64,000 bases of DNA from Macrostomum lignano (GCA_002269645.1 NIVC01000105.1:39992-103991); one strand, 5' to 3'. Positions 836 to 28,286 are shown, counted from the first letter of the stretch. Notes: generated by a model not told the origin, from the sequence alone. Program-made: numbers and translations.

Positions 836-2452
836 ATGAAGCAGCAAGTCAAGGCGGCCTTAGAATCGACCTCAGCTCACGGTCTACCGAGAACCGTGAG
901 CAGTAAACCGCTGCTCATCCGTCTAATATGGGTGGCTTTATTTCTTCTCATGGCCGGCTGCTTTTTGCGAGGATTGTTTCTGTTTTCAATAAAGTTTGCT
1001 GCAAATCCGCAAACTAGCACTTTAGAGGCGAACAAAGTGGTGTTCCAGTTTCCCGATATTTACGCCTGTCACGAGACTGCTTTCTCTGCCAGCTACGCAG
1101 TCAATGTGGACAGGATTGCTGCAAATGCGATTAATTCAATAATGAACTCCACAACGCCATCCATACGGGAATACTTAGCAAAAAAGTATCTAAACGAGGC
1201 AGACGAAAGCAAAACCATGCCGCCAAATACATTCTTCTATGTATTCTCTCTACCATACTCGCTTATGGTCGACGCGCTGGCCCACAGAGCCGAGCAATCT
1301 GTCATCTCAAGTGGTGTCCTGTACAGGGAAAAACGCGGCACTCCCCACTACGAACATGTTGAAGCGACCAGCTTCTTTCACCCAATGTACCTTCGGTGCT
1401 ACAAGTGGACGCTGGACAAAGACTTTCAGACTGCCGTGTTGAAGTCCGGCTCGTGGGCCGGCATCACTGCAACGCTGCTCATCGATTCGAGCGCATCGGA
1501 GATCGAATCCAATGGCGCGCCAATTCAGCGCATGGTGTACTCAAACTACAGCTTGCTCTCAGTCTGGGAGTGGTCTCTTTCGCTGCGCGACTACTTCGAG
1601 GCCGACAGGAGCGCCGGAATTCGAGTATTCCTCGCACCGCAAGGCGAATACCCGTCCGAGTTCGTGAGCTCGTTCGTCCTGGGTCCGGGAAAGCACCACA
1701 CAGTTGAAATCGAGATGCTGCAGCAGGAGTACACAGCTGGCCAGTTCTCGTGTCGCGGTGACAGTCCCGCAGTGCAGTTTGTGAATCCGTATGATGACAC
1801 TCCGTACAATCACACCTACAGCTATTCCTACTGCTTCTACAAGTCATATCATGAAATCATTCAAAGATTGTATAATCTCTCGGGCGATATAGGACCTTTG
1901 CCATGGCCTCTTCGAGGTAAAAAATATGTCTTTAACCTGACTGGAGAGCCAAACTTTGCCAGGCTGAAGTTGAACCATTCTGACTATTCGACCATAGAAG
2001 ACGCCATTGCTAATGTCGAGGAAAACTGCCAGTTGGATCGGCCGTGCAGCAGCCTTCAGTACCGCTCGAGCGTCTCCAGCGCTGACTGGCCCATAGACAG
2101 CTCCATCTTCTCCTTCATCAACAGCACGGTCAGGGAGGCCTGGACTCAAGCCAACGCCAGGAACCTCAGCGTGCCTGCTCTGGACTTTCTAATGACTGGA
2201 AACGATTCGGTTGTGTCATCGTATGTTCGTAAGAACCTGCTTAAAGTGCACTTTAAACCGTCGCAAACGCTAAGCGATAAAATTGTGTTCTCAAGGGACT
2301 ATGGACTGGAGAACTTTGTTGCAGAAATTGGCGGCACTATGGGAATCTACCTGGGCATGTCGCTGCTCACCTTGTGCGAACTATTCGAACTAATTTACAA
2401 TATTGTCGCTATCTACAAGTCGAAGAAGTCGCAGCAACAAGTTGAAAACTGA
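836..2452 (+). CDS. DEG/ENaC-family ion channel subunit, copy 1 (538 aa, single exon)
   Basis: N-terminal STSAHGLPR (HG motif), hydrophobic TM1, FQFPDIYAC, YLRCYKW, GIRVFL..GEYP..F.LGPG, SSADWP, and TM2 NFVAEIGGTMGIYLGMSLLTLCELFEL with the GxS filter. Uninterrupted ORF. Confidence 0.93.
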   Translation: MKQQVKAALESTSAHGLPRTVSSKPLLIRLIWVALFLLMAGCFLRGLFLFSIKFAANPQTSTLEANKVVFQFPDIYACHETAFSASYAVNVDRIAANAINSIMNSTTPSIREYLAKKYLNEADESKTMPPNTFFYVFSLPYSLMVDALAHRAEQSVISSGVLYREKRGTPHYEHVEATSFFHPMYLRCYKWTLDKDFQTAVLKSGSWAGITATLLIDSSASEIESNGAPIQRMVYSNYSLLSVWEWSLSLRDYFEADRSAGIRVFLAPQGEYPSEFVSSFVLGPGKHHTVEIEMLQQEYTAGQFSCRGDSPAVQFVNPYDDTPYNHTYSYSYCFYKSYHEIIQRLYNLSGDIGPLPWPLRGKKYVFNLTGEPNFARLKLNHSDYSTIEDAIANVEENCQLDRPCSSLQYRSSVSSADWPIDSSIFSFINSTVREAWTQANARNLSVPALDFLMTGNDSVVSSYVRKNLLKVHFKPSQTLSDKIVFSRDYGLENFVAEIGGTMGIYLGMSLLTLCELFELIYNIVAIYKSKKSQQQVEN

Positions 2453-3050
2453 GTAGGGCAATAATATATTTTCAAAACGAATGTCGTCACTATATTGGTC
2501 ATATGCCGGATTTCATCATTCATATTTTAATATTTCACACGTAAAATTTCGTTGGGGTACTTTTCAATAGTAGATATAAAGACAAAACTTGCTAATCATT
2601 AAAATTCACTCATATAGAATTGTATTTCTGTAACATAAGTCAAAGTTTTGTTATTATTTGCCTCCTAACATGAATGGGAAATTTCGTTCGTGTTTTCTAC
2701 CACTCACGAACAGTGGCCAGTGCAATAAAGGTTTATCGCGTCCTTTTCAACCCATAGTCCAGTGACATACAGCAGATATGTTGCTAAGCAACGAATAGGC
2801 AAACAATAGACGCTTCCGACAATAACTGAGAGATGGAGACAATGCTGGGATTAAGTGAAGAGGGAAATTGGCGTTCCTAATTTGGCACCGAGTGGGCATC
2901 GGTCAATTGATTACTAACTCTAATAAGGCAAATTACTCACATCAGCCTCGCAGAGAGATACGAGGACAAAGCAAGCCAGTTCATCTGCTAATATATTTGA
3001 GTCAGGCATACTCTGAGCCACCTTGTCGCTAAAGACCCATAACAGAAGGC

Positions 3051-4694
3051 ATGCATCACCTGAGAGCTGCTCTCGAGACCACTACGGCTCACGGCCTGTC
3101 GCGCCTTGTCACCGGCAAGCCCCTGTACGTGAGAGTCGCCTGGCTACTGCTGTTCTGCGTCACCATGGCGCTGTTTCTCCGCGGTTTCGTCGAGTTTGTT
3201 GGGAAGCTTCGATCCAATCCGGCAACAAACTCGCTGGAAGTGAACGGCGCCAGCTTCCAGTTTCCTGACGTGTACGTCTGCTTTGAAAATCCGATCTCGG
3301 GCAGCTATGCCGCTAATCTCCATCCCTATTCAGCTGCCGAAATTAACAAGAGAATCACTCAGACCTTTGATATACTGTCAGCATACAGCTACCTGGGAAG
3401 CAGTGACCCCGATTTATTGATTAGAGGCTTTTCGTTTGTTCAGCCTCACTCTTTACCGTATCAACTGCTGGTGGATACTTTAGGAAAAAGGCATGAGCAG
3501 AGCATTTTAGTCGGCGGCATAGTTTACAAAGACTCGGCTGGAATGCCGCACTACCGTAAGTTGAATAGCAGTATATTCTATCATCCGATTCACCTGGGAT
3601 GCGCCAAATTCGTGCTCAGTGGCGCCGAAGCCGAGCTTTTAGGAAGAAGCGGAGCCAATTCCGGACTGCTACTCAAAGTTCTACTCGATGAAAACTCCTC
3701 ATATATACCGGCGAACGGAGCGCCCATCAGAGACGCCGTGTACACGATGGAGTCTGCAATACCGGTCTCCGACTGGAGCCTCTCGTCCGGCGATCTCTTA
3801 GCCCCGGACCGAGCATCGGGACTTCGAATCTACTTGGCGCCTCCCGGCGAGTACCCGACCGACTTTGTGACCTCATTTTCACTCGGCCCGGGAAAGTATC
3901 ACACCGTGGAGATTGACATGAAGCAGCAGGAGTACAAGGCTGGCCAGTTCGACTGCCTGAGCCCGATGCCGGATGTGCAGTTCTTGAATCCGTACCACCG
4001 GACGCCGTACAATCATTCTTACAGCTACTCATACTGTTTCTACTATGAGTACCAAAGTCTCTACCAGAGAGCGCTGAACATGTCCGGGGATAAGACCCCG
4101 ATGCCTTGGGAACTGAGACACAAAGATTACATGTTCAATGTCACTTCAACGCCGAATATTCTTGATATTTACCCGAACTCAGAGTTAATCAATAATATTG
4201 ACGATGTTCAACAGCATGCAACAAAAGCTTGCGAGTCCAAGAGACCCTGTAGCACTCTTGAATACAGCGTGAGAATATCCAGCTCCGACTGGCCAACACA
4301 AGGATCGCTCACTGGATTCGTCAACAGCACAGTAGGAGCCGTGTGGCTCCAAGCAAATATGTTTCACCTGGAAGTGCCAGTGCTTGACTTTTTATTCAAC
4401 GGTAGTGACGTTGACGTGCTCACTTACCTGAGAAAGAATCTTCTTAAAGTGTTTTTCAAGCCGAAGAGTCTGCAATGCGACAAGGTCAGCTTTTCTAGAG
4501 ACTACGGAGTGTCCAATTTCATATCGGACGTTGGCGGAATCATGGGCATCTACTTGGGAATGTCGATTCTAACTTTGTGCGAGGTTTTCGAACTAATCTA
4601 CGATCTGATTAGCTATTGCAACTCACAGCGCAAAGCAAAGAGTTCCACTTCGGTGGCAGCTTCGTCCGAGATGTCAGTCAAAACACTGCATTGA
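3051..4694 (+). CDS. DEG/ENaC-family ion channel subunit, copy 2 (547 aa, single exon; appears the most divergent paralog)
   Basis: TTTAHGLSR, TM1, FQFPDVYVC, HLGCAKF, YSYSYC, SSSDWP, TM2 FISDVGGIMGIYLGMSILTLCE. Confidence 0.92.
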   Translation: MHHLRAALETTTAHGLSRLVTGKPLYVRVAWLLLFCVTMALFLRGFVEFVGKLRSNPATNSLEVNGASFQFPDVYVCFENPISGSYAANLHPYSAAEINKRITQTFDILSAYSYLGSSDPDLLIRGFSFVQPHSLPYQLLVDTLGKRHEQSILVGGIVYKDSAGMPHYRKLNSSIFYHPIHLGCAKFVLSGAEAELLGRSGANSGLLLKVLLDENSSYIPANGAPIRDAVYTMESAIPVSDWSLSSGDLLAPDRASGLRIYLAPPGEYPTDFVTSFSLGPGKYHTVEIDMKQQEYKAGQFDCLSPMPDVQFLNPYHRTPYNHSYSYSYCFYYEYQSLYQRALNMSGDKTPMPWELRHKDYMFNVTSTPNILDIYPNSELINNIDDVQQHATKACESKRPCSTLEYSVRISSSDWPTQGSLTGFVNSTVGAVWLQANMFHLEVPVLDFLFNGSDVDVLTYLRKNLLKVFFKPKSLQCDKVSFSRDYGVSNFISDVGGIMGIYLGMSILTLCEVFELIYDLISYCNSQRKAKSSTSVAASSEMSVKTLH

Positions 4695-6283
4695 AATGTC
4701 GATTAAAGAGACTCTGCTTTTAATTAATCAGACAATTACCTCTCTGAGAAATCAAAGCTTCAATAATTCTCTTATAATCAAGATTCGTGTGGGCTGAAAT
4801 TAATTTTTACGAAAACTAAATTAAAACCGTTTGTTCAGATAATGTAACCAGTGGTTCAAACGAGTTTGTAGGCGTGCCCTTTAATTTCAATAATTCAAAT
4901 GTGCAAACTTATTCAGCCGTGGATACGTCGCTCTAATGATCACGGCTCGTTCCTAACTTCCCATGGGAATGAGGCGTCAAGTCACTTTACATGAAGTATC
5001 CCCAGTCTTTACTTGCATGCGAGCACTTCCTTGGGCACCGATATGTATTGTTGAAGTCTGGGTTATTTTGTGTCCTATAAATGCAAACTCTACTAGATTG
5101 TTCGATTCCTTAATTTGCATCCCAGTGACTTCGCACACTTTTGTCTTGTTATTTCCTTTATGCAACGATTACTCTTCATTTAGGCCTTGCTATAATTAAC
5201 TATTGCTGTAGCCTACACTAAGCAACAGTATCAATTTTCTTAGAATGCTTTTCTGATACAGTAAATTTATTCTGCACCCCGTAATTCAGGTATTTCACTT
5301 CTACATGCTAAAGCAATTTCGATAAAAGATTATTTTTAGAAAACAGCTTGATTCACTCGTACATTGCAAGTTCCTCAGTAGCATACAAATGTTTAACAAT
5401 GAAGATGCTTTCTACATGTTGTTGACGACGATAATATAATATAACAACGACCATAACGACAAAGACGATGTCCATGTTTTCAAATTAACCTGTCGACTCA
5501 TTGGCTCATTGGACATTATTTTGTCAACTAGCTCGTACAGCTAGTGACGACCTTTTCTAAAAGTGTTCTTTGTTACATTTATAAATGAGCTTAAGGGATG
5601 AGGGTTCACAGGAATCATATCCGAGCTGGATAAACACTCAATAGATAGTTCATAATTTAATTTTACTCGTTACTAGATGCTTCGGTCCTCTTCTAGCCCT
5701 CCGCTTCTTTGAGATAGCGATGATGTGTCTCCGTTGGCAGCGTCAGGTTGTCTGGTAGCGGCGGGGGGATGTCAGCGCGTTAACAATGGCGTCGAAGTCA
5801 ATAATCTGAGGTAGAGGTTGATTCATTCATAAAATGCTACTGTGAGTGAGTAATAAAACACTCGAAGTACAAACACTATCCTTGAAACGATTTCGATACC
5901 CTAAGAGGATTTATTAATTTTTGATTAACGATTGGTTTCTTTACTCTAGAGTTAAAAATTGGTGAACTCAACTCCAATTCCGTTATTTCTAAAAGAAGAC
6001 GTCCTTTCTGTTTTTTTCTTGTATTATTAGGCCACATCTCTGATTTCGCTTACTGAACTCAAGGAATAACGCTAACGCCGACGAGTTGAACTGTTTCGTA
6101 AACTAACATCGGTCTTGTATACGGCAACTGTCAGAATTAAAGAAGAGAACACCGCGCGCAGAAAAACCAGAACAACAGGAAGAGGAGCACGCTAGATCGC
6201 TAGAAGTAAGTGATTACAAAATTTTGTTCCCAGACTTGCGGTCTGAAAGTGGGAGTTCGTGCGTTTAGACATTCTTACATAAT

Positions 6284-6286
<3 letters not shown>

Positions 6287-6313
<27 letters not shown>
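6287..6313. repeat. (CT)n microsatellite
   Basis: Run of ct dinucleotides. Confidence 0.9.
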
Positions 6314-6318
<5 letters not shown>

Positions 6319-6516
6319 ACTCTCCGGTGTGCTAAAGCGATCTCTTCATGGCCACTTTTAAATACTGCTGAGAGCGAATGATACGACAGAGCAATAGAAA
6401 ATGTAGCTGACCAGTCTGCAAAATAGGTTTATCAGTGACGCGCACACACAGGTTTTTTATTTCTACAATAATGGAAATCAATTAGCTGCACTGACACACG
6501 CTTTTGCTTGTGATTT

Positions 6517-6526
6517 GGCAAACAAT
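6517..6526 (+). promoter_or_regulatory. Forkhead-like motif (GGCAAACAAT) shared among channel upstream regions
   Basis: Identical 10-mer at 2798-2807 upstream of copy 2. The GCAAACA core is found upstream of all seven copies and fits the RYAAAYA forkhead consensus. Confidence 0.3.
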
Positions 6527-6733
6527 CGGTAGATTTGATGAGTATTTTATGCTATTAACTGAGCTGGTCATTAATTAGCATGACATTAGCTCAACAAATA
6601 AATCCTTTCAACTGAACTTTTCGCAAATAGATTGTTTGCAATCAGCCAGAAAACCGGGGCTAAAAAGTATAACCGATCTGTAGAGCAAGCAGTTAAGTAG
6701 ATTTGTTCCTAGCAAAAACCTCAACTGAGCAGC

Positions 6734-8395
6734 ATGAAGCAGCTGTTTCGATCAGCGCTGGAGTCCAGCAGTGCTCATGGACTGCCGAGAACGGTCAGCA
6801 GCAAGAAACCACTGTTTGTCAGGCTGATCTGGTTGGCTCTGTTCGCCTTCATGCTTGTCTTGTTTTTAAACAGCCTAGTTCGATTCACTGAGAAACTCAT
6901 CGCGAATCCGCAAACCAGCTCGATTGAGGCGAACTCCGTCACCTTCCAGTTTCCGGATATTTACGCCTGCCATGAAACTCCCGTGTCGGCCAGCTACGCG
7001 GTAAATGTAGACAAGAAGATGGCACTGGAGATCAACTCTCTATTAAGTAATACAACAAGGAAAATTCGACAATTTTTTACAACTAGAAATCAGTCTGGTA
7101 GGGACGAAAACATTCGGCCGGTTACATTCGCTTACGTGCATTCGCTTCCCTACTCGCTTTTGGTCGACGCGCTGGCCCACAGGGCCGAGCAATCTGTCAT
7201 CTCAAGTGGCGTCCTGTATAGAGGAAAACGCAGCACTCCCCAGTACAAACATATTGAAGCGACCAGCTTCTTTCATCCCACGTACCTTCGGTGCTCGAAG
7301 TGGACCCTGGACAAAGACTGGCAGAAAACCGTGTTGAAGTCCGGCTCGTGGGCCGGCATCACTGCAACGCTGCTCATCGACTCGAGCGCATCGGAAATCG
7401 AATCCAATGGCGCGCCAATTCAGCGCATGGTGTACTCAAACCACAGTCTGCTCTCGGTCTGGGAGTGGTCTCTATCAATGCGTGACATCTTTGAGCCAGA
7501 CAGGAGCGCCGGAATTCGAGTATTCCTCGCACCGCAAGGCGAATACCCGTCCGAGTTCGTGAGCTCGTTCGTCCTGGGTCCGGGAAAGCACCACACAGTC
7601 GAAATCGAGATGCTGCAGCAGGAGTACACAGCTGGCCAGTTCTCGTGTCGCGGTGACAGTCCCGCCGTGCAGTTTGTGAATCCGTACGATGACACTCCGT
7701 ACAATCACACCTACAGCTATTCCTACTGCTACTACGCGTTGTATAACAAAGGTCTTCAAGAAACGCTTAACATGTCCGGAGGGATCGGTCCTCTGCCATG
7801 GCCTTTGAGAGGGAAGAACCATGCATTCAATTTTACCGGCGAGCCCAGCCTGGCAGACACGTCCGCGGCTGAGGTGAAGCCCGACTTTTTTACTGAACTG
7901 CTTGACAATATCGATAAATACTGTCAGCTGCAACGTCCGTGCTCCAGCCAGCAGTACAAGGCTAGTGTCACCAGTGCTAAATGGCCAACTCAAAGCTCGC
8001 TTGCTTCCTTCATCAACAGCTCGGTGAAGCAGACCTGGACTCAAGCCAAGGCCAGGAACCTCAGTGTACCTGCGCTAGACTTTCTGATGACAGGAAACGC
8101 ACCCAGTGTCGCTTCGTTTATTCAAGAGAATGTTTTGAAAGTGCAGTTTAAGCCGCTTGCTGCACTCTGCAATAAAGTGGTGTTCTCAAGGGAATACGGC
8201 TTGGAAAACTTTGTATCGGATATCGGAGGCGTCATGGGAATTTATCTGGGCATGTCACTACTAACTCTTTGCGAACTGCTTGAGCTGCTGTATGACACTC
8301 TTGCTTGGTGCACTTCAAAGAGTAGACATTCCGCGAATGCAGTTGGGAGTCATGTCGCCTCCTCGAAAGCCACATCTGTTCTAGAAATAAGCTGA
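6734..8395 (+). CDS. DEG/ENaC-family ion channel subunit, copy 3 (553 aa, single exon; closest to copy 1)
   Basis: SSSAHGLPR, FQFPDIYAC, YLRCSKW, YSYSYC, SAKWP, TM2 FVSDIGGVMGIYLGMSLLTLCE. Confidence 0.93.
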   Translation: MKQLFRSALESSSAHGLPRTVSSKKPLFVRLIWLALFAFMLVLFLNSLVRFTEKLIANPQTSSIEANSVTFQFPDIYACHETPVSASYAVNVDKKMALEINSLLSNTTRKIRQFFTTRNQSGRDENIRPVTFAYVHSLPYSLLVDALAHRAEQSVISSGVLYRGKRSTPQYKHIEATSFFHPTYLRCSKWTLDKDWQKTVLKSGSWAGITATLLIDSSASEIESNGAPIQRMVYSNHSLLSVWEWSLSMRDIFEPDRSAGIRVFLAPQGEYPSEFVSSFVLGPGKHHTVEIEMLQQEYTAGQFSCRGDSPAVQFVNPYDDTPYNHTYSYSYCYYALYNKGLQETLNMSGGIGPLPWPLRGKNHAFNFTGEPSLADTSAAEVKPDFFTELLDNIDKYCQLQRPCSSQQYKASVTSAKWPTQSSLASFINSSVKQTWTQAKARNLSVPALDFLMTGNAPSVASFIQENVLKVQFKPLAALCNKVVFSREYGLENFVSDIGGVMGIYLGMSLLTLCELLELLYDTLAWCTSKSRHSANAVGSHVASSKATSVLEIS

Positions 8396-9224
8396 GTTTT
8401 TTGCAGCTGAAATTCAAGTTTGAATCAGCTTTTTAAACTTATTATACGACTCATTAATGCCGTAATGAGCGCATGCAGCGCTGCATCCTTTATACTTTTT
8501 TTATAGCCTTTAACTTTGCAATGTTTATCATTGACAAGGCCTTTAATAAAGCATTAAGTGGTTTTTTATTGTTTATCGATGCTACCCTAACTTCTCTGAC
8601 GAGACTTCTTATTCGAGAATTGTCTGACGAAAAATGTACTGTTTTCTATTTACGTATATATATTATCCAAACAAAGGTTTTTCCCAACAAAAGCGTAATT
8701 GTAGCAAAAATCGTGTGTATCAGACCTGATGTGATGCGAGCCAGTGAAATTTACTTTCTATCCTGACTTACTGATCACAAATGTCGAAAGATTTAATAAT
8801 ACTGCTAAAGCTGTACAGGAAAAGATGAAGTTAATGCAATGAGTTTGGCAAACATATTCTATCAACTGCCAATCTATCAAATCTATTGCCGAGGCCGCTT
8901 CTATCGGCAATAAATTCGATTATTGGCAATAAAAAATGAGCTATTATCAGAAAGGCAGACCAGGGAAAAGGAAATGTTTGACGTATAAATCAAAGCCATT
9001 ATTTATTCAGTAAATATACGCTTACAAGAATTGATTGCAAAGCACTCAAGGCCCTCGTATGTGAATTTAACATTGATAAGTTTCTGTTCATGCTAATTCC
9101 GATTAATTTAAGCACTGGCTCAAAACGAGAACCGTTGGTGTGCGCAGTATTAGTACAACTCATTGACACATCATCAGTTTCTCTCCTAGAATCAAAGTAT
9201 TAAATACACTGCGCCAAGAGAAAT

Positions 9225-10910
9225 ATGCAGCAAGTGAGAATAGCTGTGAGCTCTACGACTTCGCACGGACTGCCAAGAGTCGTGTCGAACAAGCCTGTGT
9301 ATGTGCGGATAGCCTGGCTCCTGCTGTATCTGCTCATGCTCAGCCTGTTTCTCAAGAGCTTCTTTGAATTCGTTCAAAAGCTACAGTCGCAGAAGGTGAC
9401 AACCTCAATAGAATCGGGCGTTGAGACTATCCGTTTCCCGGATGTGTGCATTTGCTTTGAAAATCCGATATCGGGGAGCTACTCCAGCGTCATTGACAAC
9501 AGCACCGCGGCAACAATTAATGCTACCTTCAGCGTTGTGGACGAAGAAATTAGAAGTTTTGCGATCAGGCATAACTATACTGAAAAGAAGCTTCAAGAGC
9601 TAAAAGTAGAAAGCAGCTTCTTATATGTGTTCGGTCTGCCCTACACGATTTTATTTGACAGTCTGTCTCATAGAGTCGAACAGAGCGTCATATCGAGCAG
9701 CATCATCTATATTAACGACGTTGGTGAGCCAACTTATGCTCAGATTGACACAAGAGCTTTTAACCATCCGCAGTACCTTCGATGTCTACAGTGGACAATC
9801 AACAGCACCTGGCAAGAGAAAATGACCACGACCGAGTCGTGGGCTGGACTCACCGTCACCTTGCTGTTGGACACTGACTCGTCATTCTTCGAGCAGAATG
9901 GCTCTCCAATAAAGAAGCGGACATTCATTCCAGATGGCACTGAAGTCCCGATGTCCGATTGGACCTTCTCAATTAGCGGCTACAGAGAGTCGGACAGACT
10001 TGCCGGACTGAAGGTGTTCCTGACTCCGCCTGGCGAGTATCCATCGGACTTCGTGCACTCGTTCTCTCTCGGTCCGGGTAAATATTATACAGTTGAAATT
10101 GGCATGAACCGGCATTGCCTAACTGAAAATCAGTTCGACTGTGTTGGAAGCGGCCATCCAGAAGTCCAGTATGTCGATCCGTACGATATGTCACCGATCA
10201 GCCATGCCTACAGCTATTCCTACTGCTTTTACGAGGCTTACCACCGCTTGACCCAGCAGCTTTTTAATCTGTCCGGGCATATTGGTCCGCTGCCATGGCC
10301 CCTGAGAAGTCGGAAGTATCTGTACAATATCTCTGCCCGACCGCACTTTGCCAGCGTTGACCACGACAGCTCAGTATGGCTTGAACAGACAAAACTAACG
10401 GAAAAGATCCAACAAGCTTGCAAACAGAAGCGGCCCTGCAGCACACTGGACTATGCTGCCAGCATCTCCAGTACCAACTGGCCGACCCAGAACTCCCTCT
10501 TTTCCTTCATCAACAGCTCAGTAAGGCGGACTTGGACTAGAGCCAAATCCAGGAACCTTAGCGTACCAGCGCTCGACTTCCTCATGACCGGAAATGCGTC
10601 CAGTGTGGCGTCGTATGTTCGCAACAATTTGCTGAAGGTGCACTTCAAAGCAAAAAGCGTCAGTGGCGACAGGATCGTTTTTTCTATCGACTATGGATTC
10701 TCGAATTTTGTTTCTGAAGTAGGCGGCGTCATGGGTATCTACTTGGGCATGTCACTATTGACATTATGCGAGCTGCTGGAGCTGCTGCACGACTTTGTTG
10801 CCCGGTTTTGCCGACGGCGCGATGCAGACACATCTCATGGAAGTACTAGTAACGTCGAAGTGTGTAATGTACATGTACAATCGCCTAATTGTAAAATTTC
10901 TCCTCAGTGA
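9225..10910 (+). CDS. DEG/ENaC-family ion channel subunit, copy 4 (561 aa, single exon)
   Basis: STTSHGLPR, IRFPDVCIC, YLRCLQW, YSYSYC, STNWP, TM2 FVSEVGGVMGIYLGMSLLTLCE. Confidence 0.93.
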   Translation: MQQVRIAVSSTTSHGLPRVVSNKPVYVRIAWLLLYLLMLSLFLKSFFEFVQKLQSQKVTTSIESGVETIRFPDVCICFENPISGSYSSVIDNSTAATINATFSVVDEEIRSFAIRHNYTEKKLQELKVESSFLYVFGLPYTILFDSLSHRVEQSVISSSIIYINDVGEPTYAQIDTRAFNHPQYLRCLQWTINSTWQEKMTTTESWAGLTVTLLLDTDSSFFEQNGSPIKKRTFIPDGTEVPMSDWTFSISGYRESDRLAGLKVFLTPPGEYPSDFVHSFSLGPGKYYTVEIGMNRHCLTENQFDCVGSGHPEVQYVDPYDMSPISHAYSYSYCFYEAYHRLTQQLFNLSGHIGPLPWPLRSRKYLYNISARPHFASVDHDSSVWLEQTKLTEKIQQACKQKRPCSTLDYAASISSTNWPTQNSLFSFINSSVRRTWTRAKSRNLSVPALDFLMTGNASSVASYVRNNLLKVHFKAKSVSGDRIVFSIDYGFSNFVSEVGGVMGIYLGMSLLTLCELLELLHDFVARFCRRRDADTSHGSTSNVEVCNVHVQSPNCKISPQ

Positions 10911-11525
10911 ATTTTTATTAGGAAATTATAGCAGAACGTTTAAACAAAAAAGCTATCTATGTGTCAGAGAATTAGTGTCCGTTATATACTCTCGTACGTT
11001 GTTTTGATTGTAAACGCGTAAAATTTAGGCTTGTATTTTATACTGATAAGAACTTTAGTAATGTAATTTTAAAAACAAAAAAATCAATAGAAATTCTATT
11101 TTAAAGAATTTGAAGCGATTCAAGGTGTCGCATATTTAACGTTTTATACACTATAGTCTCTAGTTAGTTTCACTTTAGCTTACCTGTCAATCATCTGCCT
11201 ACTGTGTATTAAGTAGAAGTGTATATAAAAGCGTATTGCAAAAATTAGCAGCTCATGTTGACATAGATTTGAGAATCAAAGTCCATTTGCTTTGCCAACA
11301 TTGCGCTAGCAGTTTAAAATTCGCTAAAACTTTGCTATGACACCTCAGTGCAGATAGCTGTTTGCTCGGCTTATGCAAACAGAAGATAGGTAAATGAGTC
11401 AGCAAATTCTGATATTTGCATCACAAAGCAAACGTAAATGGGATTATTAAATAGACCAAAAACCGTTAGAGAAGCTAAAGTTAAACCAGCTTGTGTTTCA
11501 CGAACAGCCTTGGAGAGGCCACAGC

Positions 11526-13163
11526 ATGCAGAAGTTGCAGCTAGCGCTCACTCAGTCCACATCTCACGGACTGCCTAGAGTGGTCTCAAACAAGCCCATC
11601 TACGTGAGAATAGCCTGGCTGTTACTCTTTCTGCTCATGTTTAGCCTCTTCCTAAAGAGCTTCTTCGACTTTGTCAACAAGCTTAAATCTCAGTTGGTGA
11701 CGTCTTCTATTGAATCGCGGAGCGAGAAGTTCCAGCTCCCGGATGTGTACGCTTGCTTTGAGAATCCTGTGTCTGGAAGCTATTCCGGTAACATTGGTGG
11801 CAGCACCGCCAGAGCCATCAATGACAGCTTCAATAGTCTAGATGAAGAGCTAAGGAACATTAAAGTTAAACACGGATTTACTCAGAAGCAGCTGCAAGCG
11901 CTTGTCATGCAAAACAGTTTCGCCTACGTGTTTAGTCTGCCCTACAAACTGCTATTCGACAGTCTGACTCACCGAGTCGAGCAGAGCGTCATATCTAGCA
12001 GTGTCAGCTTCATCAGCGCCAACGGAGAGCTGAGACGAGCTGAATTGGAAGCCAATGAGTTCAACCATCCGCAGTACCTTCGCTGTCTGCAGTGGGCCAT
12101 CAACAGCACCTGGCAGGAGAAAATTATCTCAGACGAGTCGTGGGCCGGACTCACGGTCACTTTGCTTCTAGATAACAACTCGTCCTTCGTAAAGTCAGGA
12201 GGATACCCGATTCCGCTGAAGGCTTTTCGACAAGACGGCACAGGCGTACCAGTCTCTGACTGGACTATGTCAGAGAAAGGTTACTCAGAAGCTGACAGAG
12301 TGGCAGGGCTGAGGGTGTTTTTGAGTCCAGCTGGAGAGTACCCGTCGGATTTTGTGAACTCATTCGTTTTAAGTCCAGGAAAATTCCACTTGATCAAGAT
12401 AGAACAGATTCGGAACGTACTCGCCGAAAATCAGTTCGATTGTGTTAAAAGCCGGCACGAAGTTCAGTTCGCCAACCCGTACGATCTCTCAAAGTACAGT
12501 CACTCGTACAGCTACTCCTACTGCTACTACTATGAGTACCACAAGCTTTTCCAGCAGTTCTTCAATCTGTCTGGCGAAATAAGTCCACTTCCGTGGCCTC
12601 TAAGAAGTAGGAAGTATCTATACAACTTTTCTAGTTCACCAAATTACATGGATTTGGATCCGTCTGTGTTGATCAATCAGGCAACCATTACAGAAAAGGT
12701 TCGACAAACCTGTTTGACAAAACAGCCTTGCAGCACACTGGACTACAGCACCAGCATCTCTGGCGCTGACTGGCCTACTCAGAGCTCCCTTGCTTCCTTC
12801 ATCAACAGCTCAGTGAGACAGGCCTGGACTCGAGCGAATTCCAGGAACCTCAGTGTACCTGCGCTTGACTTTCTGATGAATGGGAAGGCATCCGATGTGG
12901 CCGCATATGCTCGAGAAAACCTGTTGAAGGTGCACTTTAAACCTAAGAGCATTAGAAGTGACAAGATAACTTTCTCCATTGACTACGGTGTTTCTAACTT
13001 TGTATCGGATGTTGGCGGCATCATGGGGATCTATTTGGGCATGTCGCTGCTGACTCTTTGCGAACTGCTAGAGCTGCTGTTCGACCTTGCTGCCTGGAGT
13101 TACTCAAAGAGCGATAAAGTCAAGTCGGCTTCGGAAGAAACTGATCCTGAGACAGCGACTTGA
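11526..13163 (+). CDS. DEG/ENaC-family ion channel subunit, copy 5 (545 aa from ATG 11526, single exon)
   Basis: The ORF-track start at 11493 is non-ATG. ATG at 11526 (MQKLQLAL) aligns with paralog starts. STSHGLPR, FQLPDVYAC, YLRCLQW, GADWP, TM2 FVSDVGGIMGIYLGMSLLTLCE. Confidence 0.92.
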   Translation: MQKLQLALTQSTSHGLPRVVSNKPIYVRIAWLLLFLLMFSLFLKSFFDFVNKLKSQLVTSSIESRSEKFQLPDVYACFENPVSGSYSGNIGGSTARAINDSFNSLDEELRNIKVKHGFTQKQLQALVMQNSFAYVFSLPYKLLFDSLTHRVEQSVISSSVSFISANGELRRAELEANEFNHPQYLRCLQWAINSTWQEKIISDESWAGLTVTLLLDNNSSFVKSGGYPIPLKAFRQDGTGVPVSDWTMSEKGYSEADRVAGLRVFLSPAGEYPSDFVNSFVLSPGKFHLIKIEQIRNVLAENQFDCVKSRHEVQFANPYDLSKYSHSYSYSYCYYYEYHKLFQQFFNLSGEISPLPWPLRSRKYLYNFSSSPNYMDLDPSVLINQATITEKVRQTCLTKQPCSTLDYSTSISGADWPTQSSLASFINSSVRQAWTRANSRNLSVPALDFLMNGKASDVAAYARENLLKVHFKPKSIRSDKITFSIDYGVSNFVSDVGGIMGIYLGMSLLTLCELLELLFDLAAWSYSKSDKVKSASEETDPETAT

Positions 13164-14445
13164 CAGTCTTTGCCTAATATTTGCTACCATGACGGGTGGC
13201 CTTGGTATTGTATAAATAATTTGTTTATTGTTTACGAATCCTTGACTAAAATTTGATGTAAAATGAGCTGGAAGAGGCCTGCTATTGACCTCTTTTGTAA
13301 CTCAGAATGTATGCATTCTGATGCTGATGTCAGCATTCTCGGAGCCTACCGACAGTAGTGACTGTTGTTGCGGTTTCGATTCGGACATGTTGGACTCTCA
13401 TCCCAGACCAGTTGTAGCATAAATAAAAAAAGTAGTGCGATGCGGTGGTTTTGTTGTTTGTCGAGTCTTGTGTGAAATTTGAAAGATTGCGTGAGGATCT
13501 TGAAGATTTCGGTGGCATGTGCTGGTTAATAATACATTGTAAATCAGCTCACTGAAATTTTCTGAAGTTTGTGGGCGTTATAACAAAATACTCCTTTGTT
13601 AAAACGAATTAACATACGGTAAGTAATATGAAATGTCAATATGTCATACTAATTAAATGCTGATAAACTAATGATGCCGTATTATTTTTGAGGAACTTGC
13701 AAAATAATCTCATGACACACATTCTAGGAAAGTTTTTAAATTTAACGTGGTACTTTAGTGAGATTTTTCTTAAATTGTACAGTACGGTACGCCACAAAAT
13801 AAAGTACAGCAAGGTACGAGTAAAGCAATATACTAAAAATAAAAAGAAGATATTACTGTATACTAATAAACGCAAGCAGACTGACGCTCCTTACCTATTA
13901 TTTTTGCTTTCTTTTTTCTTCTCTACTAGCAGACAATAGGTCTTAACAGAAGTTTAAAAAGCTCGAAATTTCACACCGGTCAAAAGGAAGAATCGTTCAT
14001 AAGCTAGAGACTTCGCTTGGTCCAAATGTCTTGCTAGTTTCTTCCGTTAACGAAATTAACGAAATTTTGGGCTTGTAAAAGCAACTCGCCTAAATGAGTA
14101 TTATTTGACTAATGTGACTTGGGCTCCAGAAACTTGTGTTAGCTAACTAGCAATAATATCAATCAAACAAATTGGTTTACCAAAATGAAACTCATAGATG
14201 GAACTTAAGACGTCAGCACACAGCATCTGTTAGTCTAGATAATACTATACAAATATACTAGACGTTGTTCGCGGATGTAATTAATATTTGGCTATAGATA
14301 CCCTGACTGCAGGCTAATCAAATTCTCGAGAGTACCAAAGCAGACAAGCAGAGCAAACATTGTTGACCCTATAAGAGAAAACCCTAGGATCAAAACGAGA
14401 CAGAATATAATATATCGAATTCGTGGAAACAGAGTCTGCAAAATT

Positions 14446-16128
14446 ATGCAGCAGGTTAAGCTCGCCCTAACTCAAACGACTGCTCACGGACTGCCAAGAG
14501 TTCTCTCAAGCAAGCCAATCTATGTTAGAGTGGCTTGGCTACTTCTGTTCTTGCTCATGTTTGGTTTGTTTCTAGAGAGCTTCTGCAAGTTTGTCACTAA
14601 GCTGAGGTCCCGAAAAGTGACGAGTTCAATCGAATGGGAAGGCGAGAAGTTCCAGTTCCCGGATGTGTACATGTGCTTTGAGAATCCAGTGTCGGGCAGC
14701 TACTCCAGTTTCATGGACAGCAACACTGTGGTGGCAATCAATGATAGCTTTAGCCAATGCGTGGCCCAGCTGAAGCAGTTTGCGAATAAGCATAATTTCA
14801 GCGACGAATACACGGAACAAATAATCGCTAATAGCAGCTTAATGTTTTTACAAGGTCTACCATACAAGTTGCTATTCGACAAGCTGGCTCACAGAGTCGA
14901 ACAAAGCGTCATTTCAAGCAGCATTATGTATCTACACGAAACTGGACTGCCAACTTATGTTTCAGTAGAAACCAAGGCATTCAACCATCCGCTGTATCTT
15001 CGCTGCCTAAAGTGGACTATCAACAGTACACTGCAAGATAAAGTGACCGCGTCCGAGTACTGGGCGGGACTCACTGTTACTCTGCTATTGGACACAAACT
15101 CGTCCTTTGTAAAACCTAGCCGTAGTCATCTTTCTTTGTGGAAAACCGGCTTCCCAGACGGCACAGAGATCCCAGTGTCCGACTGGCTGCTGTCAGTGAA
15201 CGGCTTTGCAGAACCGGACAGATTGGCTGCAGTGAAGCTTTTTCTAAGCCCACCTGGCGAGTATCCGTCTGAATTTGTGAGCTCCTTCTCGCTGAGTCCT
15301 GGGAAATATCACACCGTCGAAATTGAAATGGTTAGAAATTTATTCACAGAGAACCAGTTTGACTGTCTGCCCCAACTGTCCGAAGTTCATTTTACGAATC
15401 CTTACGACCTGTCTGCGTACAGCCATGCGTACAGTTATTCTTACTGCTACTACTATGAGTACCATCGGCAGTTTCAATCGACTTACAATATCTCTGGCTT
15501 AATAAACCCTCTACCATGGCAACTAAGGAATCGTAACTATTTGTATAATTGTTCGGCTACGATAAACTATTTGACGATGGATGTCAAAAACGGTTTCCTT
15601 TCAGCAGCGATCCAGAGTGTGTCAGGCAATGTTCGGACTGCATGCAAAGGAAAACGACTTTGCAGCACACTGGACTACAGTGCCAGCATCTCCAGTGCCG
15701 ACTGGCCGACTCAAAGCTCTCTGAATTCGTTTATCAGTTTCTCTGTGAGGCAGGCCTGGTCAAGAGCCAAGGCCAGAAACCTTAGCGTACCTGCGCTCGA
15801 CTTTCTCATGACTGGCAACGCATCGAGTGTTGCCACCTATGTTCGCGACAACTTGCTTAAAGTTCACATTAAACCAGGTTGCGTTATGTGCAATAAGATC
15901 ACGTTTTCTATTGACTATAACTTCTCAAGTTTCGTCTCAGAGGTAGGCGGCATCATGGGAATTTATCTGGGCATGTCGCTGCTGACTCTGTGCGAGCTGC
16001 TCGAGCTGCTTCACGACATTATTGTATGGTATTGTAAAAGGGTCGATCGGGTGTCTTCTAAGGAGCGAGATTCTGATGGCAAAACTTCTGCATCATCCGT
16101 ATCTGTTGTTGAAATCGACATGGACTGA
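14446..16128 (+). CDS. DEG/ENaC-family ion channel subunit, copy 6 (560 aa, single exon)
   Basis: TTAHGLPR, FQFPDVYMC, YLRCLKW, YSYSYC, SADWP, TM2 FVSEVGGIMGIYLGMSLLTLCE. Confidence 0.93.
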   Translation: MQQVKLALTQTTAHGLPRVLSSKPIYVRVAWLLLFLLMFGLFLESFCKFVTKLRSRKVTSSIEWEGEKFQFPDVYMCFENPVSGSYSSFMDSNTVVAINDSFSQCVAQLKQFANKHNFSDEYTEQIIANSSLMFLQGLPYKLLFDKLAHRVEQSVISSSIMYLHETGLPTYVSVETKAFNHPLYLRCLKWTINSTLQDKVTASEYWAGLTVTLLLDTNSSFVKPSRSHLSLWKTGFPDGTEIPVSDWLLSVNGFAEPDRLAAVKLFLSPPGEYPSEFVSSFSLSPGKYHTVEIEMVRNLFTENQFDCLPQLSEVHFTNPYDLSAYSHAYSYSYCYYYEYHRQFQSTYNISGLINPLPWQLRNRNYLYNCSATINYLTMDVKNGFLSAAIQSVSGNVRTACKGKRLCSTLDYSASISSADWPTQSSLNSFISFSVRQAWSRAKARNLSVPALDFLMTGNASSVATYVRDNLLKVHIKPGCVMCNKITFSIDYNFSSFVSEVGGIMGIYLGMSLLTLCELLELLHDIIVWYCKRVDRVSSKERDSDGKTSASSVSVVEIDMD

Positions 16129-16399
16129 CGGCCAAATACGAGCGTTCCTTCGATTTAAAAAATCGAAGATATACATTCAACTAATACTACTTCTTTTGAA
16201 GCGAAAAAAAAATTAGATTGATGCATTGCAATTAAATGAAATTGCTCATGGTTTCAAACTCGCATTACGCAACAGAGAAAAAATTTCGAGCAGCTTTTAA
16301 CTTTTTTTGCTCACACGTTATGGAGACTAGGTTTCATGAAGTAAGATATTTGTAAAGTTTAAGGTTTGTGTGGTTTTGAGTATGTGAATTTTAGGGTTT

Positions 16400-16975
16400 G
16401 TGAATCTAGTGGTTTGTGAAGTTTATGTTTGTGAAGTTTAGGGTTTGTGAAGTCTAGGTTTTTTGAAATCATAGATAGGGTTTTTGAAGTCTAGGGTTTG
16501 TGAAGTCTAAGGTTTGTGAAGTCTAGGGTTTGTGAAGTGTAGGATTTGTGAAGAATAGGGTTTGTTAAGTCTAGGGTTTGTGAAGAATAGGGTTTGTGAA
16601 GGCTTGGGTTTGTGAAGTCTAGGGTTTGTGAAGAATAGGGTTTGTGAAGTCTAGGGTTTGTAAAGTCTAGGGTTTGTGAAGTCTAGGGTTTGTGAAGAAT
16701 AGGGTTTGTGAAGAATAGGGTTTGTTAAGTCTAGGGTTTGTAAAGTCTAGGGTTTGTGAAGAATAGGGTTTGTGAAGTCTACGGTTCGTGAAGTCTAGGG
16801 TTTGTGAAGAATAGGGTTTGTGAAGGCTTGGGTTTGTGAAGTCTAGGGTTTGTGAAGAATAGGGTTTGTGAAGTCTACGGTTCGTGAAGTCTAGGGTTTG
16901 TGAAGAATAGGGTTTGTGAAGGCTTGGGTTTGTGAAGGCTAGGGTTTGTAAAGTCTAGGGTTTGTGAAGTTTAGG
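16400..16975 (+). repeat. 16-bp telomere-like minisatellite TAGGGTTTGTGAAG(TC/AA), about 35 units
   Basis: Tandem units read directly. The array degenerates toward its left edge. Confidence 0.9.
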
Positions 16976-17024
16976 GCCGTGCCATCTATCGCCCATCTCC
17001 TCACAAAAACAGGCCCTCTCAAAA

Positions 17025-17215
17025 AACCAAGAGATTGGGACGCCCACCAAGAGACAGGGGCGCCCACCATGAGACAGGGACGCCCACCAAGAGACAGGGA
17101 CGCGCGCCCACCAAGAGACAGGGGTGCCCACCAAGAGACAGGGGCGCCCACCAGAGACAGGGGCGCCCACCAAGAGACAGGGGCGCCCACCAGAGACAGG
17201 GGCGCCCACCAAGAG
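17025..17215 (+). repeat. 19-20-bp minisatellite CCAAGAGACAGGGGCGCCCA
   Basis: About 9 tandem imperfect units, with degenerate copies continuing to about 17285. Confidence 0.85.
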
Positions 17216-17916
17216 CTGTCAAACAAAAGGCAGGGATGCCCAACAAGAGACTGAGCCGCTCACCATAAAGAGACAGGGTCGCCCATCTGTCTTTAATCTT
17301 CGCCCTACAAACTTTTAGAAAATTCAATCAAACAAGATAAGAAAGTTTTAGATTCTTGAGGTCTGAAGACTATAATTCAAAATAATGTTGAGAAAATACA
17401 GCTATGAAGTTTCATGTAACCAGGAATAATTTCGACAGCGATTCCGTCAAAAAAATGTCAAACAGGTGATTTATTGCAATCTTTTTTGTTGACACGCGTG
17501 TTTATTATAGCTCATGATTAGTGAGTCCATAGCCAGACATATCAGGCTCTTAAAGTGTAACATTGATGCGTTTACATAAGCAGCGAATAGGGAAAGGTTT
17601 CTGCATTATCACAAAGCAAACAACGGAAAAATTAATAAATTGGCTCATGGGACAAAGTAAATTTGTTCTTATCAATACTGGCTCATGGATTGGATCAAGC
17701 TTGATTGCCTGCCCAACTTGAATGAGTTATGGTCTGGCGCTTATTAGTTCTATCTAGAGCAGCAAGCAAATCATCGAAGTCGTTGGAACTGTGTCCACAC
17801 ACACGGAGAGTTGACACAGTGGATAGAAAACTAGACGTAAAAATCCCATGACTAGTTTAAGGAACTCGCTGCAGACGCAATATAACTGCATTGGTGTAGC
17901 CCTTGAAACACTGAAC

Positions 17917-27153: not shown

Positions 27154-27660
27154 CTGCACTATGCATATTATACGAGAACTAAATTCACTGCACTTACTAT
27201 CTTAAATGCTATATTGTTTAGTGGAACACTGGATATCAGGATCTCAGATTTCCCAATACTTTACCAGTCCCTTCGTGTGCTCTCGCTCGTGTTCAGGTTA
27301 GAAAAAAAAATGATTAAAAAATTCTGCGATAAAGCCAATATGCATGTCCATTCGTTTCTTTTTGTAATTTCCTCCCAAAGACTGCACTTCCGTTCACCCC
27401 CACTGTGCGTTTGCAAATTTGATGTCGAACTCCCGGTCGAACCGAGAAGATTTATTCGAGCCAATCGATTGTCAGCCTTATAAGGACGAGAGGAAAAAAG
27501 GACGAAAAAATAGTAATTTTTAATCAAACGAACACGACTAAAAAAGTCTACTTTAATAAAAAATATATAAAAGAGATTCATTCTGGCACGAAGGCGTAGC
27601 AGAGCCGGTAGCAGTTCCACTGGAGTGTTTGCAAAACTGCAGCAACGAACCGGATCAATC

Positions 27661-28286
27661 ATGGCAGCGTCTGTATTTGTGGCTGTGCTGGTCGCTACTC
27701 TCCTGTACAGTGGCCTGTGGTCCAGCAGCCGCTCAGTAAACGGCAGTACAGGCTGTCCTGACGTAACAACCTTTGCTTCGGCTGTTGAACCATTCGATTC
27801 ATCCCAGATGAGAGCTTTACGCAATCTGTCGACGAAAGATCGTTTGATTCAACTGGCTCAACCGTTGTTAGTTGAACGTCCAGTCGGATCGAAGAATCAC
27901 GATATTGTTCGCGATTATTTAGTTAGTAGTATGCGCAAACTGAGCTGGTCCGTTAGCTTTGATAGCTTCGAACAGGACACTGTAGATGGCCGTCACAAGT
28001 TCGATAATATCATTGCTTCTCTGCATCCGAATGCACCTAGGAAGTTGGTTCTGGCTGCTCATTTTGAGTCGAAGAAAATGCCCGGGTTTATTGGTGCGAT
28101 TGATTCAGCGGTGCCGTGCGCGATCCTGCTGCAGCTAGCGGAAGCTCTGACCCCGTTGGTTCGAAGAAACGGTTCCTCGGCTAAGGCGGAGCTGGGACTG
28201 CAGTTTGTGTTCTTCGATGGTGAGGAGGCGTTTCAAGCTTGGACTGCTACCGATTCTATCTACGGGGCCAGGCACTTGGCGGCCAG
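27661..28286 (+). CDS. QPCT: Glutaminyl-peptide cyclotransferase (M28-type QC), exon 1
   Basis: ATG 27661 with a hydrophobic N-terminus. ERPVGS, LAAHFESK, GAIDSAVPCA, FFDGEEAF and DSIYGARHLA motifs. Donor CAG|GTGAGA at 28286/28287 (phase 2). Confidence 0.92.

What the first reader, a model, noticed from the sequence alone, without database searches (positions are those of the whole stretch)
1751..2047. Channels retain only 6 shared extracellular cysteines; most thumb disulfides appear lost
Seen: the Cys shared by all seven are FPDxYxC, LxCxxW, FxC, YSYSYC, the C preceding xxxRPC, and the (R/Q)(P/L)C itself. In copy 1 the thumb reads YSYSYCFYKSYHEIIQRLYNLSG where ASICs have YSxxxCxxxC...CxC, and the palm HRxEQSVISS has Ser where ASIC has LLSC. 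Known: ASIC1 has 14 conserved extracellular Cys (7 disulfides, 5 in the thumb). Inference: about 4 of the 7 disulfides are gone, so the thumb that couples ligand binding to gating is structurally remodelled. This would be a family-defining feature.
Basis: partly seen in the sequence, partly recalled or inferred. Interest (0 to 1): 0.72.

Follow-up and report, generated by a model that had tools for sequence, protein, structure and literature searches.

The report
Flatworm sodium channels with few disulfides
Seven neighbouring, intact DEG/ENaC-type sodium-channel genes, most like those of the flatworm Macrostomum, keep only six of the fourteen hallmark extracellular cysteines, so they are a natural, still unstudied case of this channel fold held by three disulfide bridges instead of seven.

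Summary
The window holds seven tandem, intronless, + strand genes (836-19614). Each is a full-length DEG/ENaC subunit (Pfam ASC, E 1e-35 to 1e-42). Exactly six extracellular Cys are invariant. Bases 1751-2047 run from the first to the last Cys of the thumb of copy 1.

In an alignment with human ASIC1a, checked against PDB 9e4a, the six Cys fall on C93, C194, C290, C310, C361 and C367. That makes three probable disulfides. Four canonical pairs are lost: C172-C179 and three of the five thumb pairs.

The loss is stepwise (14, 10, 8, 6 Cys) within one clade. Its named members are all Macrostomum lignano proteins. Of 127 channels compared, only the ten in this clade keep just two thumb disulfides.

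The genes are old and under purifying selection (dN/dS 0.13-0.24). They keep the HG, FPxxxxC and GxS motifs.

AlphaFold2 (pLDDT 92) still predicts a two-helix thumb, so the thumb has lost cross-links but is not shown to be refolded. An N-glycosylation site found only in this clade sits where a lost CxC was.

This is a new variant of a known family, of moderate interest. Its gating stimulus is unknown.

The parts
836..2452 (+). Copy 1 (W1): intronless DEG/ENaC gene, 538 aa, with six extracellular Cys in total
   Evidence: ORF. Pfam ASC PF00858, E 1.8e-36, profile positions 2-455 of 455. AF2 pLDDT 92.3 and Foldseek match to FaNaC1 8on8 at E 1.4e-25.
1751..2047 (+). Thumb domain of copy 1, from C306 to C404: helix 330-346, loop 347-380, helix 381-400. 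Only C306, C333, C398 and C404 remain of the ten canonical thumb Cys.
1067..1069 (+). Codon of C78 (FPDIYAC), equivalent to ASIC1a C93. Its inferred partner is C188 (codon 1397-1399), equivalent to C194.
   Evidence: The C93/C194 pair is present in 125 of 127 sequences.
1874..1882 (+). N347-L-S sequon lying on the position of the lost C323-x-C325. It is present only in the nine proteins W1-W7, P0001 and P0002.
1934..1942 (+). N367-L-T sequon in the thumb loop, conserved in 18 of 23 members of the wider low-Cys clade
3051..4694 (+). Copy 2 (W2), 547 aa
   Evidence: (E 1.3e-38).
6734..8395 (+). Copy 3 (W3), 553 aa, 70% identical to copy 1
9225..10910 (+). Copy 4 (W4), 561 aa
   Evidence: (E 4.8e-42).
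11493..13163 (+). Copy 5 (W5). The listed ORF starts at a GTG; the likely eukaryotic start is the ATG at 11526 (MQKLQ...). Six extracellular Cys in total.
14446..16128 (+). Copy 6 (W6), 560 aa
17848..19614 (+). Copy 7 (W7). The likely start is the ATG at 17929 (MQQLK...), which matches the other copies.

Best explanation
The seven genes encode functional subunits of trimeric DEG/ENaC cation channels from a lineage-specific clade whose named members are all Macrostomum proteins. In this clade the extracellular disulfide framework has been cut from seven bridges to three. The three that remain are the equivalents of ASIC1a C93-C194 (beta1 to beta-ball), C290-C367 (base of the thumb) and C310-C361/363 (start of helix alpha4 to end of helix alpha5). 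The thumb keeps its two-helix architecture. The tip loop, which two nested disulfides staple in other family members, is instead a conserved Pro/Trp-rich loop (N-L-S-G-x-I-x-P-L-P-W-P-L-R...N-x-T/S) carrying two conserved N-glycosylation sequons. Helix alpha4 is packed with aromatic residues (YSYSYC-F/Y-Y). Shown here: family membership, the Cys pattern, the stepwise phylogenetic loss, purifying selection and a confident canonical fold prediction. Inferred: the three disulfide pairings, stabilisation by packing and glycans, and that the proteins conduct Na+. Not known: what gates them. They lack the ASIC proton-sensor residue H73 and the Y71-W287 thumb-wrist pair, so ASIC-type proton gating is unlikely. 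The best structural match is a peptide-gated FaNaC.
For: All seven give full-length Pfam ASC hits. The PDB sequence search finds FaNaC and ASIC1 at E 8e-15 to 1e-9. The AF2 model has pLDDT 92.3 and pTM 0.87, with helices 330-346 and 381-400. Foldseek gives FaNaC1 8on8 at E 1.4e-25 with TM about 0.6, then ASIC1a and ENaC. HG, FPxxxxC, G-M-S, the TM2 Glu and a small Deg residue (A/S) are all present. The six Cys align to h93, 194, 290, 310, 361 and 367 in a 127-sequence L-INS-i alignment. The reference sequence was verified against PDB 9e4a. Across the 127 sequences the canonical partners are lost together: 172/179 in 33 cases, 323/345 in 15 and 325/337 in 15, with at most 2 half-losses per pair. 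This supports the pairing logic. The NJ tree built without the Cys columns nests the 6-Cys group with the 8-Cys M. lignano paralogs, and that group is sister to a 10-Cys group. Only these ten of the 127 keep two thumb disulfides. Between paralogs pN is far below pS; dN/dS is 0.13-0.24 over the whole gene and 0.22-0.31 in the thumb where it can be estimated. The N347 sequon is exclusive to nine six-Cys proteins, W1-W7, P0001 and P0002.
Against: There is no experimental evidence of expression, trafficking or current. By spacing, C398 aligns with ASIC C361, whose canonical partner C314 is absent. A register shift or a non-canonical C310-C361 pairing therefore has to be assumed. AF2 can return a family-typical fold from the alignment even if the real thumb is more mobile. 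ENaC work cited (Firsov et al. 1999) found the Cys-rich domains important for surface expression, so so few bridges might impair trafficking unless compensated.
Confidence: 0.72

Rival explanations
1. The thumb is truly remodelled. With three of its five staples gone and about 20 more residues than ASIC1a, it adopts a different or much more mobile structure, and this changes how stimuli are coupled to the gate.
For: Three thumb disulfides are lost. The thumb-wrist aromatic pair is not conserved: W287 is F304, and Y71 is N, Q or R. pLDDT dips to 86-87 at residues 371-390. The thumb evolves somewhat faster than the rest of the protein: dN/dS 0.31 against 0.24 for W1-W3, and 0.26 against 0.17 for W6-W7.
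Against: AF2 still predicts both helices with pLDDT of 86 or more. The thumb span of 96-99 residues equals the family median of 96, so ASIC1a at 77 is the short one. The loop motif P-x-P-W..LR..N-x-S/T is already present in the 8-Cys relatives, so change was gradual.
Confidence: 0.15
2. The copies are decaying or non-conducting, that is, relaxed duplicates, or modulatory subunits that never form a pore on their own. On this view Cys loss reflects loss of constraint.
For: They form a tandem array of seven paralogs in a repeat-rich region. No expression data are available. Three other M. lignano DEG/ENaCs gave no currents with the peptides tested, but those are different genes.
Against: All seven ORFs are intact although synonymous sites are saturated. 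dN/dS is 0.13-0.24. There are 129 invariant columns, including the whole pore motif GGxMGIYLGMSxLTLCE. The six remaining Cys are invariant across the array and in M. lignano P0001.
Confidence: 0.1
3. Alignment artefact: the canonical Cys are present but displaced.
For: The thumb is hard to align at 16-20% identity.
Against: Copies 1 and 5 contain only six Cys in the whole extracellular domain, so no alignment can recover more.
Confidence: 0.01

Closest known systems
FMRFamide-gated sodium channels (FaNaC; Malacoceros FaNaC1 PDB 8on7-8ona, Aplysia FaNaC 7yvb/7yvc)
   Same: FaNaC gives the best sequence match (E 8e-15) and the best structural match (E 1.4e-25, TM about 0.6). It shares the topology, the HG and GxS motifs, a spiralian origin and a long thumb.
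   Different: Identity is only 16-18%. Whether the FaNaC peptide-binding residues are present was not examined. The window proteins keep three rather than seven canonical disulfides. No peptide response is known for this clade. The M. lignano genes tested by Dandamudi et al. 2022 (PMC9234716) are other genes.
Acid-sensing ion channel 1 (ASIC1; PDB 2qts, 6ave, 9e4a)
   Same: Same fold and same trimeric family. The six retained Cys map onto C93, C194, C290, C310, C361 and C367. The pore motif is GxS and the Deg position holds a small residue.
   Different: Lacks C172-C179, C323-C345, C325-C337 and one of the two alpha4-alpha5 bridges. H73 is Q, A or V; Y71 is N, Q or R; W287 is F. The thumb is about 20 residues longer.
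Macrostomum lignano uncharacterised DEG/ENaC paralogs (A0A1I8GD92 = P0001; PAA48052.1 = P0002; PAA58710.1 = P0005; PAA81733.1, PAA90405.1 and A0A1I8GGQ7 = P0003, P0004 and P0007)
   Same: Same clade. P0001 is 48-51% identical to every window copy and has the same six Cys and the N347 sequon.
   Different: P0003, P0004 and P0007 still keep the C325-C337 pair (8 Cys). None has been described functionally. P0001 carries a misleading database name, 'Acid phosphatase'.
Centipede BRTNaC1 (PDB 8ymr and related entries) and insect pickpocket (PPK) channels
   Same: These also show variation in Cys number. A computational analysis of BRTNaC1 structures lists three thumb-region disulfides (PMC12804983). 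A survey of 578 insect PPK models reports 23% with nine or fewer Cys (PMC8438182).
   Different: Drosophila PPKs conserve all ten thumb Cys at over 90% (PMC3583452). Many of the low-Cys insect models are fragments: 36% have zero or one TM segment. No full-length, conserved clade with two thumb disulfides was reported.

Membership tests
DEG/ENaC (Pfam PF00858, ASC) | Full-length match to the family profile above the curated cut-off | tested here: met
   All seven score 121-145 bits against a cut-off of 23.6. For six copies a single stretch covers profile positions 2 or 3 to 455 of 455. Copy 2 matched in two stretches, the best covering 225-455.
DEG/ENaC (Pfam PF00858, ASC) | Two TM helices, a cytoplasmic N-terminal His-Gly (HG) gating motif, and FPxxxxC after TM1 | tested here: met
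   (S/T)-(A/S)-H-G-L with H15 and G16 invariant. F/L-P-D-x-x-x-C is present. AF2 helices 26-56 and 510-537 flank the ectodomain.
DEG/ENaC (Pfam PF00858, ASC) | GxS selectivity-filter motif and a conserved Glu in TM2; a small residue at the Deg position | tested here: met
   G507-M-S509 and E515 are invariant. The Deg position (hASIC1a G433) is A in copy 1 and S in the others.
DEG/ENaC (Pfam PF00858, ASC) | Hand-like ectodomain fold (palm, beta-ball, finger, thumb, knuckle) | tested here: met
   AF2 pLDDT 92.3. The top 50 Foldseek PDB hits are all FaNaC, ASIC or ENaC, with E 1e-25 to 1e-18. This rests on a monomer prediction only.
DEG/ENaC (Pfam PF00858, ASC) | Cysteine-rich extracellular domain: 14 conserved Cys forming 7 disulfides, 5 of them in the thumb | tested here: not met
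   Only 6 of 14 are present. This hallmark varies within the family: 80 of the 127 sequences compared have all 14, and the others have 5 to 13. Failing it therefore does not exclude membership, and this deviation is the finding itself.
DEG/ENaC (Pfam PF00858, ASC) | Homo- or heterotrimeric, amiloride-sensitive Na+-selective channel activity | not testable with these tools
   Needs heterologous expression and electrophysiology.
ASIC (proton-gated subfamily) | H73 and K211 proton-activation determinants and the Y71-W287 thumb-wrist aromatic pair | tested here: not met
   H73 is Q, A or V. Y71 is N, Q or R. W287 is F. K211 is K or R in copies 1-3 only. The determinants are as listed in the bioRxiv preprint 10.1101/2022.06.28.497943.
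FaNaC (FMRFamide-gated subfamily) | Placement inside the FaNaC clade and activation by FMRFamide-type peptides | not tested
   FaNaC is only the best structural and sequence neighbour in the PDB. No tree with named FaNaCs was built, and ligand response cannot be tested here.

The most novel reading that the evidence does not exclude
The stepwise replacement of thumb disulfides by aromatic and proline packing and by a new N-glycan is adaptive. On this reading it yields channels whose gating is insensitive to extracellular reductants, which would suit an interstitial animal exposed to hypoxic or sulfidic sediment. Alternatively, a more compliant thumb tunes the channels to a new stimulus. Either way it would show that the five-disulfide thumb, treated as a hallmark of the family, is dispensable for a working channel.
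Probability: 0.12. Interest if true: 0.55.

Novelty: new variant of a known kind. Interest (0 to 1): 0.36.

Why it matters
The ten thumb cysteines are treated as a signature of DEG/ENaC channels, and the thumb is a main site of ligand, toxin and proton action in ASICs. A conserved, selected clade that works with two thumb bridges, together with surviving 8-Cys and 10-Cys intermediates, is a ready-made natural series. It could be used to ask which disulfides are needed for folding, trafficking and gating, and what compensates for their loss. It is a family-level curiosity rather than a new kind of system. The orthologues in M. lignano are already in public databases, unnamed or misnamed.

Tried and rejected
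- The word-index homology search with the seven-sequence profile returned only one protein, P0001. The exhaustive HMMER search was needed to see the family.
- Exact look-ups of copy 1 and of P0001 on public contigs found nothing. The source organism is therefore inferred only from the nearest hits, which are all M. lignano at 51% identity or less. The window is not from the M. lignano assemblies in the collection.
- The taxon of the 10-Cys sister group could not be established. Its members come from one Logan run, DRR639838, and from a TARA Oceans metagenome scaffold, and none carries a name.
- Model coordinates are not exposed, so S-S distances and a thumb-only superposition could not be computed.
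- I checked whether the M. lignano channels tested by Dandamudi et al. belong to this clade. They do not: none has YSYSYC and their sequences differ.
- Literature searches for a described Cys-poor DEG/ENaC clade found none. They found only general statements on Cys conservation and a count of low-Cys insect PPK models.
- The pseudogene and misalignment explanations were considered and rejected.
- The survey covers only the 150 best of 2480 hits, so it is biased toward relatives of the query. Cys-poor clades elsewhere in the family are not excluded.

Full report
**What is in the window.** Bases 836-19614 carry seven uninterrupted + strand ORFs of 538-588 aa in tandem: 836-2452, 3051-4694, 6734-8395, 9225-10910, 11493-13163, 14446-16128 and 17848-19614. 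Each matches the Pfam ASC (DEG/ENaC) profile at E 1e-35 to 1e-42. Six of the seven do so in one stretch that covers nearly the whole profile. The copies are 46-70% identical to copy 1. The flagged interval 1751-2047 is codons 306-404 of copy 1. It begins with the codon of C306 and ends with that of C404, so it is exactly the thumb domain.

**The observation.** The seven-way alignment has seven invariant Cys columns: C78, C188, C306, C333, C398 and C404 in the ectodomain, and C514 in TM2. Copies 1 and 5 have no other Cys between the two TM helices. The other copies have one to four extra, non-conserved Cys. The quoted motifs are all present: FPDxYxC, YSYSYC, C-x3-(R/Q)(P/L)-C, HRxEQSVISS and YSYSYCFYKSYHEIIQRLYNLSG.

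**Mapping to the canonical cysteines.**
- I recalled ASIC1a from memory and checked it against the PDB. It matched human ASIC1a (9e4a), and I used the sequence printed by the tool as the reference.
- The reference has 14 ectodomain Cys at 93, 172, 179, 194, 290, 310, 314, 323, 325, 337, 345, 361, 363 and 367.
- An exhaustive HMMER search with the seven-sequence profile found 2480 family members, of which the best 150 were returned.
- I made a MAFFT L-INS-i alignment of 127 sequences: the reference, the seven window copies and the 119 hits of 430-720 aa. In it the six window Cys fall on 93, 194, 290, 310, 361 and 367.
- Established ASIC1 structural knowledge (Jasti et al. 2007) gives the pairs 93-194, 172-179, 290-367, 310-363, 314-361, 323-345 and 325-337. 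This rests on memory of the literature, not on a tool result.
- The survey supports the pairing independently, because partners disappear together. Both of 172/179 are absent in 33 sequences, both of 323/345 in 15 and both of 325/337 in 15, with at most two half-losses per pair.
- The window proteins therefore most likely keep three bridges: C78-C188, C306-C404 and C333-C398. They have lost four, three of them in the thumb.
- C398 has the spacing of C361 rather than C363. The same 'C.C.' pattern occurs in 29 sequences and 'C..C' in 13. The single remaining alpha4-alpha5 bridge is evidently tolerated in either register.

**How unusual it is.**
- Of the 127 aligned sequences, 74 keep five thumb disulfides, 34 keep four, nine keep three and ten keep two.
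- The ten with two are the seven window copies plus M. lignano P0001, P0002 and P0005.
- A neighbour-joining tree built with the 14 Cys columns removed groups the seven copies with P0001 and P0002. P0005 falls next to the 8-Cys P0003 and P0004.
- Together with the 8-Cys P0007, these proteins are sister to a 10-Cys group: P0008, 9, 11, 12, 13, 15, 16, 19, 20 and 29.
- The 10-Cys group comes from one unnamed sequencing run and from a TARA Oceans scaffold.
- The loss was therefore stepwise: 14 to 10 (172-179 and one alpha4-alpha5 bridge), then 8 (323-345), then 6 (325-337).
- P0001 is 48-51% identical to every window copy, and nothing closer exists in the collections. The window probably comes from a Macrostomum-related flatworm not represented there. 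This attribution is an inference.
- Other M. lignano DEG/ENaC lineages (P0062, P0132) also have only three thumb bridges. This suggests a general tendency in that animal.

**Are the genes alive?** All seven ORFs are intact although synonymous sites are at or near saturation (pS 0.53-0.84). Non-synonymous divergence is much lower. dN/dS is 0.13-0.24 over the whole gene and 0.22-0.31 in the thumb where it can be estimated. The HG motif, FPxxxxC, the GGxMGIYLGMSxLTLCE pore segment with its G-M-S filter, and a small Deg residue are conserved. These are old duplicates under selection, not pseudogenes.

**Structure.**
- AlphaFold2 on copy 1 with a 60-sequence alignment gave mean pLDDT 92.3 and pTM 0.87.
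- The thumb is predicted as helix 330-346, with C333 in its first turn, then a 34-residue loop, then helix 381-400, with C398 in its last turn. C404 lies just before the next palm strand.
- Block pLDDT across the thumb is 86-97.
- Foldseek against the PDB returns only FaNaC, ASIC and ENaC chains. The best is Malacoceros FaNaC1 8on8 at E 1.4e-25, with TM about 0.6.
- The thumb span of 96-99 residues is the family median of 96; ASIC1a at 77 is short.
- The fold appears to be retained.

**What replaced the staples.**
- In the 10-Cys relatives the tip of the thumb reads ...C-x-C...P-x-P...R-C...K-C.
- In the 8-Cys relatives it reads ...G-C...P-L-x-W-x-L-R...C-x-N-M-S.
- In the six-Cys proteins it reads Y-N-L-S-G-x-I-x-P-L-P-W-P-L-R-x-K-x-Y-x-F-N-x-T.
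- The N-x-S sequon at N347 lies on the former C323-x-C325. It occurs in W1-W7, P0001 and P0002 and in no other member of the wider clade examined.
- The N367 sequon is older and is present in 18 of 23 clade members.
- Helix alpha4 is unusually aromatic (YSYSYC-F/Y-Y-x-x-Y).
- I infer that hydrophobic packing and glycans substitute for the covalent links. This has not been tested.

**Function.** The ASIC proton determinants and the thumb-wrist aromatic pair are absent: H73 is Q, A or V; Y71 is N, Q or R; W287 is F (the determinants are as described in the preprint read). ASIC-like proton gating is therefore unlikely. The nearest solved relatives are peptide-gated FaNaCs. Three M. lignano channels tested with peptides by Dandamudi et al. 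were silent, but they are different genes without the YSYSYC signature. The gating stimulus of this clade is unknown.

**Known or new.** Reviews and family surveys describe the Cys-rich thumb as highly conserved. Ten thumb Cys are over 90% conserved in Drosophila PPKs, and 11 of the 33 residues identical between the two transmembrane helices in a placozoan, vertebrate and nematode alignment are Cys. A survey of insect PPK models counted 23% with nine or fewer Cys, but 36% of those models have zero or one TM segment, so many are fragments. An analysis of BRTNaC1 structures lists three thumb-region bridges. I found no description of a full-length, conserved clade with two thumb bridges, nor of the Macrostomum proteins. 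I classify the finding as a new variant of a known family. Interest is moderate: useful to DEG/ENaC structure-function specialists, not surprising at the level of mechanism.

**Limits.** The survey covers only the 150 best hits. The tree is a simple NJ tree without support values. The disulfide pairings, glycan occupancy, trimer formation and channel activity are all inferred.

Noticed in passing
window 836-19614: The seven channel genes are all intronless, on the same strand and spaced 0.6-2 kb apart. M. lignano P0001 is equidistant (48-51%) from all seven, which suggests the array expanded after the split from the M. lignano lineage. The NJ tree instead nests P0001 inside the array.
   Followed up: partly
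window copies 2, 3, 6 and 7 (alignment A1 column 511; for example codon 476 of the ORF at 3051-4694): An extra, apparently unpaired Cys sits in the lower-palm strand just before TM2, aligned to hASIC1a Y417. It is present in 4 of 7 copies and in M. lignano P0001. Copies 6 and 7 have a C-x-M-C pair there. It could be a free thiol or an inter-subunit link.
   Followed up: no
window 50946-61418: A 10.5-kb minisatellite of about 393 copies of a 27-bp unit (GAGATGCTGACAATATTCTGTGTCAGA), with strong GC skew of about +0.27. The long ORFs listed inside it are artefacts of the repeat.
   Followed up: partly
window 16349-16976, 20095-22224, 24427-25922, 28460-29159, 30200-30838, 34087-34506, 39665-40087, 40968-41331, 41868-44590, 44878-46373, 46947-48696, 63094-63565: There are many further tandem arrays with periods of 6-28 bp, up to 118 copies of a 23-mer. 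Roughly a third of the window is minisatellite DNA. The arrays explain the composition spikes and the spurious repetitive ORFs.
   Followed up: partly
window 32425-33909 (- strand): A 494-aa ORF with a C-terminal caspase domain (Pfam Peptidase_C14, E 1e-28) and a long N-terminal region without a domain hit.
   Followed up: partly
window 27625-28290 and 40183-40974 (+ strand): Probable exons of a Peptidase_M28 (glutaminyl-cyclase-like) gene (E 7e-14, N-terminal part of the domain only) and of a WD40-repeat gene. Both look like fragments of intron-containing genes, unlike the intronless channel genes.
   Followed up: partly
L002 (TARA scaffold) 800-2215 and 3001-4569: The 10-Cys relative P0012 is also intronless. 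It lies next to two ORFs with a PiggyBac-type transposase domain (DDE_Tnp_1_7) on a marine metagenome scaffold of unknown eukaryotic origin.
   Followed up: no
P0001 (UniProt A0A1I8GD92, M. lignano): The closest public relative is named 'Acid phosphatase' in UniRef, although its only Pfam domain is ASC. Several other M. lignano DEG/ENaC entries carry unrelated names (PKD_channel, PBPe, Mab-21, DUF1553). These are probably fused or mis-annotated gene models.
   Followed up: no
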